Below are positions 58,908-64,000 of a stretch of DNA of 64,000 nt, piece after piece (within the stretch, counting starts at the first letter, position 1; the number at the start of each line of letters is the position of its first letter). The notes beneath the pieces were generated by a model. That model was not told the origin of the DNA. It searched no databases and saw nothing but the letters and a program-made list of their open reading frames with translations. Position numbers and translations under genes: made by a program. Source of the stretch: Auanema rhodensis (lineage: Eukaryota; Animalia; Nematoda); NCBI GenBank assembly GCA_964057225.1, contig OZ059895.1, positions 7,068,001 through 7,132,000 on the forward strand, read 5' to 3'.

Positions 58908-59810
58908 TTAAGAATATGAAAATAATCTACAAAGTTTTTTAATTGGAAAGCAAACAGCTTCTCCTAATAGACGACAGACATTGTTAAACGACATTGGAGG
59001 TCTAGCACCGTTTGTATAACGTACAAAGGTGAAGCCATCACCATAACTACTTTCCAAATGATAATAGTTTCTGAAATTCACAATAGTTTGACTGTACAAC
59101 ACTGTAGCACAGAAAGCTATAGGCTTTATTTGATATTGACAAAATTAATTGGAAAAACTTACAAAAGAGTGTCATGATGTATGAAGCCGTTCGTTTTATA
59201 AAACGAAATTGCAGCTAGATTAGTTGATAATACATGTAAAAATACGGCGCGTGGATACGGTGGGCTTTCAACAATCTTAAGCAATTAATGAAAAATTTTA
59301 AATATGGTCTTAAGATGAACCGTATCCAACAAATGACCAAGAAGTCTTGAAGCTAAACCCGCTCGTCGATATTCATTGTGCACTGCTAGGGATAAAATAT
59401 ATACCACATGCGAACTAGTATCAGACAGTATCTCACGATCCTTAACAGATCATTAGTTTCATAATTGGTGTTCTAACAAACCTCCATGTTACAATGAAGA
59501 ATTTTCTTTGTTTCTGATACCATAATGGCTGCTAATCGATTACCATCAAAGAGTCCGTGACTAATTAATGAGCCTGACACCACTTCTTCATACCTGAAAA
59601 AAAGATATTTCGAATGGTTCTTTCAAAAACAAAGAAAAAAAGATGTGAGACTCACCAGCAATCAGGATATTGAATTGGAAATGATGCTGTACAAATAGCT
59701 CGAACATCAGGCAAGTCAGAGGGCACTAATGGTCTTAGAATAAGTCGACGAACTAAATCGCTTTCAGACCGAAGGAGAGAATCACATTCATCTTTTAGAC
59801 TACACGGCAT
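58908..59810 (-). CDS. NAA60: N-alpha-acetyltransferase 60 (NatF)-like GNAT
   Basis: [75 protein letters not shown], and an amphipathic Cys-containing C-tail typical of NAA60. Confidence 0.88.
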
Positions 59811-60958
59811 TTTGTCCAAGACTTAAAGTCCATTCATATCGTCATCAAATACATTAAATTCTGGGAGAATTGAAGTACAGGGTTCAACGATTGTCAATTT
59901 AGTAAAATAATGTGATTACTCGGAGAAGAAGAAAGACGATGACGAGGCAAACCAGGAATCGAACTTTAGATGGAACATTGGCTCATAAGACCCATGAACC
60001 GATCGAACTGAAAATAATTGCTAGCTGACGATTTATGAGACAATTAATATGGGGTAGCGCTACAAACACTATGACCTCAGGGGAATATATTTAAGACATT
60101 GGGTCCATGTCTTATTTGGTCTATATAGACTTAAGAAGCTAGACACTATACAAACCATATATATGACAAATACGGACATTTTAAACTTACTTTGATCGAA
60201 AATAAAACTGATTTAAACTTGGTCGTGGGCAAAGGCAAGTTCTAAATGAAAACATTATTTCATTATATTAATATGAACTGATAAAATAGAAGAGTTCAGA
60301 CGAACGAAACAAAATAGAAAAATATGTTTAAAATGTTAACTAAAGAGGAGACAACGTGATTCAAAGAAAATTCCCAAGATAGTTATACATTTAACCCGAG
60401 ACTTTACGGGGATTCAAACAAATCAGTGTTGAACAATTCAACAGTGGCAGAAAATAAATTATAGAAACAAAGGGCAGCATTAGATCCACATTTAAAATTG
60501 TAACAGATGGAGTTACGTTTGTAAAAGATGATGGATCGAGTTTCACAGAAACTGATATCAGCATAATCAGTTCATCAAAAGCTTGCTGACTTTATCTCAT
60601 TAACTAATTCAGCTTTTAATTCGAAATAGCTGTGCAATTCAAGTCAAGAACTAGCATGATTCCAGAAAAAATAAAAGAGTCATGTAACATATTGTTACAA
60701 AACATTGCAAATGCAAACAGAAATAATATACTTTTAAGAATGTATAAATATTTTAGCGATCAAACGCTGAGTTTATCATGTTCTAGATTTGAAAAAATAT
60801 TGTTATTGATTTCTAAAAAAACGACAATTGATGAACATAGTATAATCTCTAAAAACATTTCTTCTTTTGATGAATACTTCATAAAGATAAATATAAATAA
60901 CGCAACAATAACAACTTTATAGATTACAAACAACTACTCTTAGAGCTTCCTACTTCAT

Positions 60959-62760
60959 TTACTTTCTGGTATTAAAATATGCAGGAGCTATTAGATACGC
61001 TGTGTTGTTCAGGGACGAAGCTGAATGGTCAAATATATGGCTAAAATGAATAGAAGAAAACATACTCATGCTGACCCAGTCCATTAGTTTAGTCCGGATT
61101 TCCTGATCACTAAGATTGGAATAGTCAAGACGCCGAATGTACATATGCTGTAAGAAAGAACTGCTCAATAAGCATTTGTTATTCATGAAAGAGCACATAC
61201 AAAGAGAAGCTGCCTAGTTGTAAGAGAATCGATGTATGATGGTAATGTTTCATCCAACAAACGTAAAAGCTTGACTCTGTTATTAAGACGTCCTTGAGTG
61301 TTAGGAACTGGATAGAGACCTTGTAACTTGCAGACTTTGTTCTAAATTTCGATCGGTCATTACTAACTAGATGAATACTCTTACAAAAACATCTCCTGAT
61401 AGTTTTTCCACTTTGGGCAAATCTATTTCACTAATCGAAGCAGGCTTAAAATGTTTTCGATGATGTACGTAAATAAACAAATAAAATTGCCTTCTTAAGA
61501 ATTTCGTGCAATTCAGGATATATTGAATTTGAGTTCTGGATTTCCATAGCAAAAAATTTTCTACGTTGCTCATCCGTCCAAAAATGACGAGTCAAAACGA
61601 CTCGGGGAAAGAAAATTCTGAAAAAGATTTGAATGTAACAGTAGGCACAACACTTTCTATTGCTGTTTTCAATAATCAACAATAGAAAAAGTATGCACAT
61701 ACACGCAGAACCCAATGAGATAAAAAGTTGCAGGTAGCGGGAGCAGGACAATAATCATTAAAGCTTTCAACGTTTCCGATGGCGTCTGTAAAATAAATGC
61801 TTCGGTATGTGAACGAAAACTGTAGGTTACTAAGATCATCTATTGGAACACTACATTATAATTATTTCACAGCACTCAATCTATACTAAAAGAACCTCAT
61901 CTGCTCCCGCACCTTTCGATTTATAGTGCCTATGTTTTCTGCTTCTATGAGCTTACACCGCCACCAAACCAAATGGCTACAGAAGAACTTACAGTAGAGC
62001 TATCAACACGTCACCAGGACCCGGAATTTGTAAGACGACAATGAGGAACATCATTTTCATGATTTCGCTACCACTCTAATAAAATGGAAGGTTTAAATAA
62101 GAACTCAAAATACTGTAAATTCAAGAAGCTGACACACTAGCGCAAGAAAAAGTAAGTAGACAACAGCAAATGAGGTTCCTTATTAATTCATATTTGGCAT
62201 ACCTGAACAAGAACTTCTAACTCTGACGTCGAAAGGGTACTTAGACTAGTCTTCCCTGACATTAAACCTCGACGAAGCTTAATATACGTTTTGATATCAT
62301 TTAAACACCATTTGGATCCTTTGAAAGAGAACGTTTATCTTTTTAAGAAAATACACATACATACCTTCAAAAACCAATTTGTTCAAAGCAGCTACTTTTG
62401 GCCATTTCTCTAAAAAGTTTTCCCATTTAAATCGAAGAGAGGTTGGGTCTGGAGGAGCAACCGGTGGAGGACCAGCAGAAGTAAATCTGGAAACAATTAA
62501 ATAAATAAAAAACAAAAACTTTGTAAAGAATGCAACTGCATTCGCATATATCAATCTAGGAATGAGAAGCATAACGATTAGTTGGAAAGCAATTGGATTT
62601 AGGATTCCAGTTCAGTTATGGGTGAACTAACAATTCAAAAACTCGTTCAATTTGCTATTTGCTATGGAAATAGGAAATAATACCTTATAGATGTTCTAAA
62701 TGAAGTCAGAGTAGGCAGGCGTAAAACCACAGTGGGATTCAAGGCTCTTCTTAACGACAT
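60959..62760 (-). CDS. LETMD1: LETM1-domain mitochondrial inner-membrane protein (LETMD1-like) with mutually exclusive exon 4
   Basis: Arg/Ser-rich presequence MSLRRALNPTVVLRLPTLTSFRTSIRF; KLVFEGSKWCLNDIK; LSTSELEVLVQ; TM exon; IFFPRVVLTRHFWTDEQRRKF; RVKLLRLLD; ends APAYFNTRK*. All exons join in phase. Confidence 0.8.
61703..61785 (-). CDS. LETMD1-like mutually exclusive exon B (83 nt, phase 0 to 2): TPSETLKALMIIVLLPLPATFYLIGFC(V)
   Basis: TTTTACAG acceptor, GTATGT donor, open frame, aligns without gaps to exon A. Confidence 0.85.
61993..62075 (-). CDS. LETMD1-like mutually exclusive exon A (83 nt, phase 0 to 2): SGSEIMKMMFLIVVLQIPGPGDVLIAL(L)
   Basis: TTTTATTAG acceptor, GTAAGT donor, open frame, same length and phase as exon B. 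Confidence 0.85.
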
Positions 62761-63279: not shown

Positions 63280-64000
63280 TCACAAACGTGTTATTTCGGC
63301 GGCTAACGAATTACCACTATCAGCTCTCTTCAAAGAACAGGCCTTATCAACACAGTATGAATCCGATAGGTCACCGAGAGTAGGTGATGGGTCGTCAGGA
63401 TGGTCAGGCTCTATTCCCTGTGAAATCATTGAATCCCCACCAGGACACAAGCCCGGCAACGAAGAGCCCGAAGTGTTAGCAGAGTCGCTAGTTAAAGCTA
63501 GTTGCTTGGGGGCAAATTCTGTAAACAAGCGGCAATAGGAGTTATATTCAAAAAATAACGATATTACCATATTTATCAACAATTTTCTTTTCTTCTCGTT
63601 CCAAAGCTTCTAGCATTTTTTGTTTTTCTCTCAATATATATTGCAGTTGAAGTGAACGAGCCGACAACTGAATAATTCGAGCAATATTCTGAACCAAAAA
63701 TATAGTTTAAGTTTGAAACTTGGAAGGCCTACTTGGAACAACACTACTAATCTCATTTGTAGCTGAGATGATATTATGCTTACTAGTGATGAATGTGATT
63801 CACCAATAACTGAGACACCATTAACGGCTATTACTACATCGCCTATAATCAATTATCTAGTTTTAAAATTGACAAGGAGTTTTAACCTCTCCTTATACCA
63901 GCTTTCGAAGCTGGGGCTCCATCTTGAACATAATCTACATAAGTAATACGTTCCACGGAATTTGTCCCACGTTTGAAAACGTATGACTGAACAAGATTAT
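63280..64000 (-). CDS. gras-1: GRASP/tamalin/CYTIP-like PDZ scaffold, 5' end outside the window; exons >64000-63887, 63842-63733, 63688-63568, 63518-63280
   Basis: PDZ segment [40 protein letters not shown], followed by the leucine-zipper [32 protein letters not shown]; C-terminal EITRL*. Confidence 0.85.

What the first reader, a model, noticed from the sequence alone, without database searches (positions are those of the whole stretch)
61637..62181. Crossing long-range RNA stems plus a UNC-75-type element could act as the switch for the LETMD1 exon pair
Seen, in the sense transcript: stem 1 is AAGGAACCUCAUUUGCU (62165-62181) paired with AGCAGAUGAGGUUCUUU (61889-61905), 17 contiguous pairs with two G-U, and loops out exon A. 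Stem 2 is AACAUAGGCAC (61926-61936) paired with GUGCCUA-C-UGUU (61637-61648), 11 bp with one bulge, and loops out exon B. The arms interleave, so the stems cross. The CELF/UNC-75 consensus GUGUUGUG (61646-61653) overlaps the stem-2 arm. A 12-bp local hairpin (61654-61665 with 61677-61688) brings that element next to the exon B donor. Established: competing pairings control mutually exclusive exons in arthropod Dscam1 and 14-3-3. Inference: a docking/selector-like switch in a nematode, with UNC-75 binding opening stem 2 to favour exon B in neurons. Stem 2 is the weaker call.
Basis: partly seen in the sequence, partly recalled or inferred. Interest (0 to 1): 0.8.

Follow-up and report, generated by a model that had tools for sequence, protein, structure and literature searches.

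The report
RNA-pairing switch for two alternative exons
In a nematode mitochondrial-protein gene, a short conserved intron element can base-pair either with a site upstream of alternative exon A or with the inside of alternative exon B, which probably decides which of the two exons is used; this type of switch is known in insects and mammals, but I found no report of one in nematodes.

Summary
Stem 1 (62181-62165 with 61905-61889, minus strand) is real: 17 bp, -24.5 kcal/mol, reached by 0 of 1000 shuffles and 0 of 609 genomic windows. Both arms are perfectly conserved islands in Auanema sp. JU1783, inside introns that otherwise do not align. RNA contigs show that exons A and B (83 nt each) are used mutually exclusively, about 44:56.

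Stem 2 is at chance level. It is not conserved and has zero ensemble probability. The GUGUUGUG site is not enriched, and it is absent from all eight orthologous loci.

The real partner is different. The 3' arm of stem 1 is part of a 21-nt element D (61910-61890). D also pairs with the coding sequence of exon B, S2 (61746-61737; 10 bp, -20.4 kcal/mol). The two pairings overlap on D, so only one can form at a time.

The same S1-D-S2 layout, built from unrelated sequences, occurs in Pristionchus pacificus and P. mayeri. C. briggsae and C. nigoni have a strong D-S2 but only a weak S1. C. elegans and Haemonchus have neither.

Most likely this is a competing-structure switch like the one in human ATE1, the first I know of in nematodes. 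All evidence is computational.

The parts
62203..62318 (-). Constitutive exon 3 (e3) of the LETM1-domain gene. Its donor is at 62202.
   Evidence: RNA-contig joints 62203|62075 and 62203|61785; translation.
62165..62181 (-). S1, the upstream selector and 5' arm of stem 1, in the intron between e3 and exon A, 21 nt after the e3 donor.
   Evidence: 17-bp helix with D, -24.5 kcal/mol, 0 of 1000 shuffles. A 14-nt run, 62178-62165, is identical in Auanema.
61993..62075 (-). Alternative exon A, 83 nt (3n+2). It encodes SGSEIMKMMFLIVVLQIPGPGDVLIAL.
   Evidence: RNA contigs e3-A-e5 at depth about 41-63. An 83-nt orthologous exon is present in six of the seven other loci; in Diploscapter it is split by an extra intron.
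61889..61910 (-). D, the docking element in the intron between A and B. 61905-61889 pairs with S1 and 61910-61901 pairs with S2. The two footprints overlap on AGCAG (61905-61901).
   Evidence: 61910-61890 (21 nt) is the longest perfectly conserved intronic run against Auanema, where background intron identity is 37-46%. Helices.
61703..61785 (-). Alternative exon B, 83 nt (3n+2). It encodes TPSETLKALMIIVLLPLPATFYLIGFC.
   Evidence: RNA contigs e3-B-e5 at depth about 54-81; orthologous exon in all loci.
61737..61746 (-). S2, the exonic selector CUGCUCCCGC (codons Leu-Leu-Pro-Leu of exon B). It is fully Watson-Crick complementary to D.
   Evidence: -20.4 kcal/mol; 0 of 500 shuffles; 1 of 609 genomic windows. 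It is the best sense-strand complement of exon B in the whole 64 kb. Codons 14-19 have no synonymous change against Auanema, while most of the other codons do (13 of 21).
61641..61702 (-). Local hairpin of the 85-nt intron after exon B. The core arms are 61689-61677 and 61665-61653. In this species the base of the hairpin pairs the exon B donor (61702-61691) with 61653-61641.
   Evidence: MFE -20.5, z -2.77. Auanema has a 13-bp hairpin of different sequence at the same place (z -3.13). Caenorhabditis has none.
61926..61936 (-). Not supported.
   Evidence: Chance level; not conserved; pair probability 0.
61637..61653 (-). Not supported as regulatory elements. In the fold this stretch closes the local hairpin against the exon B donor.
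61491..61617 (-). Constitutive exon 5 (IFFPRVVLTRHFW...), followed by a GC-AG intron.
   Evidence: Joints; weak PF07766 match for this piece; full PF07766 hits in the orthologues.

Best explanation
This is a three-element competing RNA structure. The pre-mRNA order is e3, S1, exon A, D, exon B (which contains S2), e5. D can pair with S1 or with S2, but not both, because the two footprints overlap on D.

When S1-D forms, exon A and both its splice sites sit in a 259-nt loop. The e3 donor is brought close to exon B, S2 stays free, and the product is e3-B-e5.

When D-S2 forms, the branch site and 3' splice site of exon B sit in a 154-nt loop and the middle of exon B is double-stranded. Exon B is skipped and the product is e3-A-e5.

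I also infer a latch. S1-D forms as soon as D is transcribed. If the spliceosome still joins e3 to exon A, S1 leaves with the intron. D is then free to clamp exon B, which prevents the frameshifting A+B product.

Shown here: the helices, their statistics, their conservation, their lineage-specific co-evolution, and the mutually exclusive use of A and B in RNA. Inferred: that the helices form in vivo, and which exon each one favours. The direction is taken from the mutational results on human ATE1 R1/R3/R4.
For: 1. Statistics in the window. S1-D is -24.5 kcal/mol (0 of 1000 and 0 of 500 shuffles, 0 of 609 genomic windows). D-S2 is -20.4 kcal/mol (0 of 500; 1 of 609).

2. Conservation. In Auanema sp. 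JU1783 (protein 60-67% identical) S1-D is 20 bp at -31.2 and D-S2 is 12 bp at -23.9. D (21 nt) and S1 (14 nt) are the longest identical intronic runs, in introns otherwise 37-46% identical. RNAalifold recovers S1-D with two consistent one-sided changes. Exon B codons 14-19 carry no synonymous change.

3. Independent recurrence with other sequences.
- P. pacificus: S1 CUCUCACCUUC, D GAAGGUGAGAGGA, S2 UCCUCUCACC (-17.9 and -17.7; 7 of 500 and 1 of 500).
- P. mayeri: -21.2 and -27.9 (2 of 500 and 0 of 500).
- C. briggsae and C. nigoni: D GGUAUGGGCAAA with S2 UUUGCCCGUGCC, -18.9 (0 of 500 and 2 of 500).
- The exonic arm always lies at exon B positions 39-62, on the Leu-Leu-Pro-x-Pro codons.

4. 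Cross-species matrix. Each intron pairs strongly only with exon B, or with the upstream intron, of its own lineage.

5. Shared arm. The two helices overlap on D in all five species, by 5-11 nt. Shuffles reach the observed overlap in 34, 1, 13, 1 and 0 of 300.

6. Predicted folding. One of the two helices dominates every full-length ensemble. In the four species with a strong S1, the nascent RNA up to D gives S1-D a probability of 0.91-0.99. After removal of the first intron, D-S2 has 0.96-1.00 in all five.

7. RNA. Only e3-A-e5 and e3-B-e5 are seen, with the A share at 0.43-0.45 in four runs.

8. Precedent. In ATE1, disrupting R1-R3 raises exon 7a, disrupting R3-R4 raises 7b, and disrupting R3 gives double inclusion (PMC7797038).
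Against: There is no structure probing or mutagenesis; everything is computed.

Within the window's own lineage the helix cores are invariant, so there is conservation but almost no classical covariation. Only one relative was available. The cross-lineage argument rests on analogous elements, not alignable ones.

C. elegans (339 of 500 shuffles, no D-S2 in the ensemble) and Haemonchus contortus (467 of 500) lack the structure yet keep both exons. So it is not required for the exon pair to exist. In C. elegans, exclusion fidelity relies partly on NMD (PMC4165533).

In C. briggsae and C. nigoni, S1 is weak (-5.9, not significant).

Equilibrium folding of the window predicts almost pure S1-D (0.955), but exon A still makes up about 44% of transcripts. 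A kinetic assumption is therefore needed.

S2 lies on pyrimidine-rich Leu/Pro codons, which pair easily with any purine-rich stretch. The conserved synonymous sites could instead reflect an exonic splicing enhancer.
Confidence: 0.6

Rival explanations
1. One reading: stem 1 and stem 2 cross as a pseudoknot, each looping out one exon, and UNC-75 binding to GUGUUGUG opens stem 2 to favour exon B in neurons.
For: All elements exist at the stated coordinates. Stem 1 is significant. Bidirectional upstream and downstream pairings are known for Drosophila srp (PMC4691838).
Against: The stem 2 core is matched by 307 of 1000 shuffles. Its arms are not conserved in Auanema and its pair probability is 0.000. 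The octamer is under-represented rather than enriched (3 against 6.6 expected), and it is absent from the homologous region of all eight loci. In the fold, that stretch closes a local hairpin against the exon B donor.
Confidence: 0.04
2. Stem 1 acts alone. It loops out exon A and brings the e3 donor close to exon B, tuning the ratio. The D-exon B complementarity is a by-product of purine-rich intron sequence meeting pyrimidine-rich Leu/Pro codons.
For: S1-D is the strongest helix in the window and in Auanema. S2 lies in a C/U-rich codon run.
Against: D-S2 is the most widely recurring element. It is strong in five species from three lineages, including C. briggsae and C. nigoni where S1 is weak. 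In the window it is pure Watson-Crick and includes two C-G pairs with C on the D side. The cross-species matrix is block-diagonal. Exon B is frozen at synonymous sites exactly at this spot.
Confidence: 0.12
3. S1, D and S2 are binding sites for splicing regulator proteins (intronic or exonic enhancers or silencers), and their complementarity is incidental.
For: Conserved intronic islands next to alternative exons in nematodes are often protein-binding motifs (PMC1500816, listed, abstract only). C. elegans and C. briggsae share a roughly 55-nt block around D that extends beyond the paired part.
Against: D has unrelated sequences in the three lineages (GCGGGAGCAGAUGAGGUUC, GGAAGGUGAGAGGAGGAG and GGUAUGGGCAAA), yet each stays complementary to its own S2, and in two lineages also strongly to its own S1. 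A conserved protein motif would predict the opposite.
Confidence: 0.08
4. The helices play no part in exon choice. Mutual exclusion comes only from the reading frame (83 nt = 3n+2) plus NMD, and the helices are neutral or serve some other process.
For: Both-in and both-out products are out of frame. For the C. elegans orthologue F30F8.9, exons 4a/4b are scored NMD-dependent (PMC4165533). C. elegans and Haemonchus lack the helices.
Against: Neutral helices would not persist as perfect islands in saturated introns, and would not re-appear with new sequences in other genera.
Confidence: 0.06

Closest known systems
Human/mammalian ATE1 exons 7a/7b: competing R1-R3 and R3-R4 pairings (Kalinina et al. 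2021, PMC7797038)
   Same: Both have two homologous mutually exclusive exons. A central element in the intron between them is complementary to one element upstream of the first exon and to one at the second exon. Only one pairing can form at a time. The upstream pairing loops out the first exon. The helix energies are of similar size, and both isoforms are expressed.
   Different: In ATE1 both selectors are intronic and overlap the 3' splice sites, and they resemble each other. Here the downstream selector lies about 40 nt inside the coding sequence of exon B and constrains its synonymous sites. I found no counterpart of the 30-kb R2-R5 module. ATE1 is proven by mutagenesis and antisense oligonucleotides; this case is not.
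Insect docking site / selector systems (Dscam1 exon 6, 14-3-3 zeta, Mhc, MRP1; summarised in PMC6071210)
   Same: One docking sequence is complementary to alternative selector sequences, the pairings exclude one another, and the arms are conserved while the surrounding intron is not.
   Different: In those systems the docking site lies in the intron outside the cluster and each selector is intronic, next to its exon. Pairing activates the adjacent exon against a general repressor. Here the docking element lies between the two exons, and each pairing is predicted to repress an exon.
Drosophila srp bidirectional pairing model (Yue et al. 2016, PMC4691838)
   Same: A two-exon cluster whose choice is set by competition between an upstream and a downstream long-range pairing, with an outcome that follows relative helix strength.
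   Different: srp uses two docking sites and two intronic selectors that may form a pseudoknot. Here the downstream intronic pairing (stem 2) is not supported, and the competition is for one shared arm.
C. elegans F30F8.9 exons 4a/4b (Kuroyanagi et al. 2014, PMC4165533)
   Same: This is the orthologous gene with the same pair of homologous 83-nt mutually exclusive exons. The exon pair itself is therefore already known.
   Different: That paper gives no cis mechanism beyond NMD dependence. The C. elegans intron between the exons is 683 nt. It keeps a D-like block, but the predicted pairing is degenerate.

Membership tests
Competing RNA structures controlling mutually exclusive exons (docking/selector class, including the ATE1 type) | A cluster of adjacent exons of which exactly one is included | tested here: met
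   RNA contigs of four runs show e3-A-e5 and e3-B-e5 only. Both exons are 83 nt, so both-in or both-out shifts the frame.
Competing RNA structures controlling mutually exclusive exons (docking/selector class, including the ATE1 type) | One element complementary to two or more others, with overlapping footprints so that only one helix can form | tested here: met
   D 61910-61889 pairs with S1 (17 bp) and with S2 (10 bp), and the footprints overlap on 61905-61901. Overlap of 5-11 nt is seen in five species.
Competing RNA structures controlling mutually exclusive exons (docking/selector class, including the ATE1 type) | Helices stronger than chance | tested here: met
   0 of 1000 and 0 of 500 shuffles; 0 and 1 of 609 genomic windows.
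Competing RNA structures controlling mutually exclusive exons (docking/selector class, including the ATE1 type) | Arms conserved or co-varying across species | tested here: met
   The arms are perfect islands against Auanema, with two consistent one-sided changes. The same layout with different sequences occurs in Pristionchus and partly in Caenorhabditis, and the cross-species matrix is block-diagonal. It is not met in C. elegans or H. contortus.
Competing RNA structures controlling mutually exclusive exons (docking/selector class, including the ATE1 type) | Selectors are intronic and lie next to each variable exon | tested here: not met
   S1 is intronic, upstream of exon A. S2 lies inside exon B, at exon positions 40-49.
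Competing RNA structures controlling mutually exclusive exons (docking/selector class, including the ATE1 type) | Disruptive mutations change exon choice and compensatory mutations restore it | not testable with these tools
   Needs a minigene or genome editing.
   Stem 2: 307 of 1000 shuffles, not conserved, probability 0.
UNC-75/CELF-regulated exon | A (G/U)UGUUGUG element in the flanking intron, conserved in orthologues | tested here: not met
   One site at 61653-61646. The window holds 3 against 6.6 expected. There is none on the sense strand of e3-e5 in the eight loci.
UNC-75/CELF-regulated exon | Neuron-specific isoform shift that depends on unc-75 | not testable with these tools
   Only whole-sample RNA contigs were available.
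LETM1-like RBD domain proteins (PF07766; LETMD1-like) | The protein matches PF07766 and is orthologous to annotated Letm1 RBD proteins | tested here: met
   The exon 5 piece alone gives E 3.5e-4, below the cut-off. The assembled 289-aa product is 60-67% identical to the Auanema protein P0041 and about 39-47% identical to the Caenorhabditis proteins, and the matched full-length orthologues carry PF07766.

The most novel reading that the evidence does not exclude
A protein-independent, splicing-coupled latch. Excision of the first intron removes S1, so D is released to clamp exon B. If S1-D persists instead, exon A is hidden. A single 21-nt element would then enforce 'one and only one' exon. This logic would have been kept across several rhabditid lineages (Auanema group, Pristionchus, part of Caenorhabditis) while all three sequences were rewritten together with the codon usage of the transmembrane-helix exon.
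Probability: 0.3. Interest if true: 0.75.

Novelty: new member of a known kind. Interest (0 to 1): 0.62.

Why it matters
Mutually exclusive splicing in nematodes has so far been explained by RNA-binding proteins, introns too short to splice, and NMD (PMC4165533, PMC3585155). I found no reported nematode case of competing RNA structures in the paper searches.

If it holds, this locus shows that the docking/selector logic of insects and mammals also works in a third phylum. It also shows that a selector can lie inside a coding exon and freeze its synonymous sites.

It suggests a simple way for a cell to avoid including both exons: the competitor arm is removed by the first splicing step.

It is easy to test, because Pristionchus pacificus and C. 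briggsae both carry strong versions and can be edited genetically. C. elegans is a natural weak-structure comparison in which fidelity is known to lean on NMD.

The two exons encode alternative versions of the hydrophobic segment of a LETM1-domain mitochondrial protein, so the switch sets which form of that segment the protein carries.

Tried and rejected
1. RNAduplex on whole introns chains helices across very large loops and is a poor statistic. I replaced it with contiguous-helix energies plus shuffles.

2. Orthologue retrieval. The spliced protein has no reference, so I searched exon 5 alone against the representative library. I then built a profile and looked up encoding contigs. Five of the 12 look-ups found nothing: C. 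elegans isoform P0043, C. briggsae P0038, Mesorhabditis, Steinernema twice... more exactly searches failed, and C. elegans was recovered through its other isoform. A search with the Auanema protein found no closer relative of the window's species.

3. Metagenome scans for more nematode loci failed. The protein-pattern scan gave no confirmed relative. A neutral exon A DNA pattern gave 120 unrelated loci, none with the gene.

4. H. contortus. No D-like element on the sense strand, although its exon B would pair with the C. briggsae D.

5. An exon A-intron helix in C. briggsae (-13.9, 11 of 500) acquires two mismatches in C. elegans when inspected in alignment A3. I dropped it.

6. A repeat or transposon origin for the stem 1 arms is unlikely. 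There are no further copies in the window beyond chance.

7. The GC-rich 13-mer region (about 61968-61956) gives a -13.6 helix with exon B but is not conserved in Auanema.

Full report
**Gene and exons**

The finding lies in a minus-strand gene. Assembly-graph contigs from four runs labelled RNA fix the exons:
- e1 from ATG 62760 to 62684
- e2 62486-62365
- e3 62318-62203
- exon A 62075-61993
- exon B 61785-61703
- e5 61617-61491
- four further small exons

Each run holds two 141-nt contigs that differ only in the middle 83 nt. One is e3-A-e5 (depth 41-63) and the other is e3-B-e5 (depth 54-81). No contig joins A to B. The A share is 0.43-0.45 in all four runs.

Both exons are 83 nt (3n+2), so including both or neither shifts the frame. 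The 289-aa product is a LETM1-RBD protein. Its closest hit is Auanema sp. JU1783 P0041, at 60% identity for isoform A and 67% for isoform B. The C. elegans orthologue is F30F8.9. Its homologous 83-nt exons 4a/4b were already validated as mutually exclusive and NMD-dependent, with no cis mechanism proposed (PMC4165533). The exon pair is therefore known. The open question is the RNA structure.

Stem 1 is exactly as described: 17 contiguous pairs, two of them G-U, at -24.5 kcal/mol. No dinucleotide shuffle of the two introns reaches that energy (0 of 1000, 0 of 500), and neither does any of 609 real 207-nt windows from the same 64 kb. It appears in the MFE and centroid folds of the whole 585-nt region, with mean pair probability 0.955.

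Stem 2 exists as written (-12.3 kcal/mol with its bulge) but is ordinary. Its 7-bp core is equalled in 307 of 1000 shuffles and its ensemble probability is 0.000.

GUGUUGUG occurs three times in the window against 6.6 expected.

The local hairpin in the 85-nt intron after exon B is real (13 bp, intron z = -2.8). In the fold, its base pairs the exon B donor with the very stretch that holds GUGUUGUG and the 3' arm of stem 2.

**Orthologous loci**

I fetched the locus from seven other nematodes: Auanema sp. JU1783, Diploscapter pachys, C. briggsae, C. nigoni, C. elegans, Haemonchus contortus, Pristionchus pacificus and P. mayeri... that is eight loci in all, of which six have both 83-nt exons intact. 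In Diploscapter exon A is split by an extra intron.

**Conservation in the nearest relative**

The window and Auanema align at 80-82% in exons A and B. In the introns, away from splice sites and arms, identity is only 37-46%. Against that background the longest identical intronic runs are:
- a 21-nt block at 61910-61890, which contains the 3' arm of stem 1
- a 14-nt block at 62178-62165, the 5' arm

In Auanema the helix is 20 bp at -31.2 kcal/mol, reached by 0 of 300 and 0 of 500 shuffles. RNAalifold recovers it as a consensus helix with two one-sided, pair-preserving changes.

Neither arm of stem 2 is conserved, and neither is the octamer. The octamer is absent from the sense strand of the e3-e5 region in all eight loci.

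Auanema does have a 13-bp hairpin of unrelated sequence at the same place in the intron after exon B (z = -3.1). Caenorhabditis has none, and the Pristionchus intron is only 46 nt.

**The missing partner**

I searched the whole e3-e5 pre-mRNA, exons included. The second-strongest helix joins the 5' half of the conserved 21-mer (GCGGGAGCAG, 61910-61901) to CUGCUCCCGC inside exon B (61746-61737). It has ten Watson-Crick pairs at -20.4 kcal/mol. It is reached by 0 of 500 shuffles of the intron and by 1 of 609 genomic windows. It is the best sense-strand complement of exon B anywhere in the 64 kb.

I call the three elements S1 (upstream intron), D (the 21-mer) and S2 (exon B). S1-D and D-S2 share AGCAG on D, so they exclude one another. 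Auanema has the same arrangement (D-S2 12 bp, -23.9 kcal/mol, 1 of 500).

Exon B codons 14-19, which hold S2, carry no synonymous difference between the two species. Thirteen of the other 21 codons do differ, twelve of them synonymously.

**Recurrence with different sequences**

- P. pacificus: S1 CUCUCACCUUC, D GAAGGUGAGAG / GGUGAGAGGA, S2 UCCUCUCACC. Energies are -17.9 and -17.7 kcal/mol, at 7 of 500 and 1 of 500 shuffles. An extended D-S2 duplex reaches -33.8 kcal/mol at 0 of 500.
- P. mayeri: 12 bp at -21.2 (2 of 500) and 16 bp at -27.9 (0 of 500).
- C. briggsae and C. nigoni: D GGUAUGGGCAAA pairs with S2 UUUGCCCGUGCC at -18.9 (0 of 500 and 2 of 500). The best upstream-intron helix also lands on D but is weak (-5.9, not significant).

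In every case the exonic arm falls at exon B positions 39-62, on the Leu-Leu-Pro-x-Pro codons, whose codon usage differs between lineages.

A cross-species matrix is block-diagonal. Each intron pairs at -18 to -28 kcal/mol with exon B of its own lineage, and mostly at -7 to -16 with the others. The same holds for the upstream intron against the middle intron in the Auanema group and in Pristionchus.

The two helices overlap on D by 5-11 nt in all five species. Shuffles reach the observed overlap in 34, 1, 13, 1 and 0 of 300.

The sequences of D are unrelated between lineages. That argues for RNA-RNA pairing and against a shared protein-binding motif.

**Where it is absent**

C. elegans keeps a D-like block that is conserved with C. 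briggsae (GGCAAACU[C/U]GCAACUAAGAAUC...). Its middle intron has grown to 683 nt, and the predicted pairing is degenerate.

H. contortus has no D at all.

The structure is therefore not needed for the exon pair to exist. C. elegans, the weak-structure species, is also the one in which aberrant products are known to be cleared by NMD.

**Predicted folding behaviour**

In full-length ensembles one of the two helices always dominates:

| Species | S1-D | D-S2 |
|---|---|---|
| window | 0.96 | 0.00 |
| Auanema | 0.16 | 0.80 |
| P. pacificus | 0.28 | 0.71 |
| P. mayeri | 0.99 | 0.00 |
| C. briggsae | 0.00 | 0.99 |

In the four species with a strong S1, a nascent transcript ending just after D gives S1-D a probability of 0.91-0.99. 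In all five, once the first intron (with S1) is removed, D-S2 rises to 0.96-1.00.

**Mechanism (inferred)**

S1-D loops out exon A and leaves exon B open. D-S2 encloses the 3' splice site of exon B and makes half of the exon double-stranded. If e3 is spliced to A, S1 is lost and D clamps B, which blocks A+B double inclusion.

The direction of each effect is taken from ATE1. There, disrupting the loop-out helix raised the first exon, disrupting the second helix raised the second exon, and disrupting the shared element gave double inclusion (PMC7797038).

Equilibrium folding in the window predicts almost pure S1-D, while the observed ratio is 44:56. A kinetic, co-transcriptional competition has to be assumed.

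**Comparison and novelty**

The closest known system is ATE1 R1/R3/R4. Next are the insect docking/selector systems and the srp bidirectional model (PMC6071210, PMC4691838).

The differences are that the downstream selector is exonic, each helix is predicted to repress rather than activate, and the phylum is new. Paper searches found no structure-based mechanism for a nematode mutually exclusive exon pair, and none for this gene.

I class it as a new member of a known kind, with an unusual exonic selector.

**Limits**

- Everything is computational.
- Only one close relative of the window's species was available, and the helix cores there are invariant.
- The RNA evidence comes from assembly-graph contigs, which drop rare isoforms.
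- Tissue specificity could not be addressed.

Noticed in passing
window 61445-61490 (minus strand): The intron after exon 5 has a GC donor (AAG|GCAAUU...AG). All four RNA runs show the joint 61491|61444 with ends GC..AG.
   Followed up: partly
window about 59200-59830 and 63380-63850 (minus strand); L001, L003-L008: Gene order on one strand is PDZ-domain gene, then the LETM1-domain gene, then a GNAT acetyltransferase. This order recurs across the orthologous loci: both neighbours are seen in Auanema, C. elegans, Haemonchus and both Pristionchus, and the PDZ gene also in C. briggsae and C. nigoni. Several databases annotate PDZ-LETM1 fusion proteins (P0025, P0028, P0030, P0032). In the window an RNA contig runs without a break from exon 1 to beyond 63000. 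This may be an operon or read-through transcription.
   Followed up: no
L002 1984-2040 and 2148-2177 (Diploscapter pachys): Exon A is split by an extra intron of about 107 nt at the Gly codon of QIPG|PGD. The best complement of exon B positions 50-60 lies upstream of exon A (AGUGGGCGGAG, -17.0 kcal/mol, 11 of 300 shuffles), not between the two exons.
   Followed up: partly
L007 1864-2546 compared with L003 1541-1718: The C. elegans intron between exons 4a and 4b is 683 nt, against 178 nt in C. briggsae. A block of about 55 nt around the D-like element is conserved between them (GGCAAACU[C/U]GCAACUAAGAAUC...UUUUGG.GUGUCUUUUCUC).
   Followed up: partly
L008 1940-1953 with 2379-2392; L006 1421-1432 with 1869-1880: In both Pristionchus species a conserved block of the upstream intron (…AUACUGU…) is complementary to the 3' splice site of exon 5 (UACAG|UAU). 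The energy is -17.5 kcal/mol in P. mayeri and -11.0 in P. pacificus. This is a possible further long-range pairing that spans both alternative exons.
   Followed up: no
window 62011-62030 (exon A): A 20-nt run, CAAAUUCCGGGUCCUGGUGA (codons QIPGPGD), is identical in Auanema including its synonymous sites. I found no conserved pairing partner for it.
   Followed up: no
window 61956-61968 and 61733-61740: The GC-rich stretch GGUUUGGUGGCGG, noted elsewhere by the scan, can pair with CCGCUACC of exon B, next to S2 (-13.6 kcal/mol). It is not conserved in Auanema.
   Followed up: partly
L005 2371-2381 (H. contortus exon B) against L003 1647-1658: Haemonchus exon B carries GUGCCCAUACC, which would pair at -20.9 kcal/mol with the C. 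briggsae D element. Haemonchus itself has no such element on the sense strand of the locus.
   Followed up: yes
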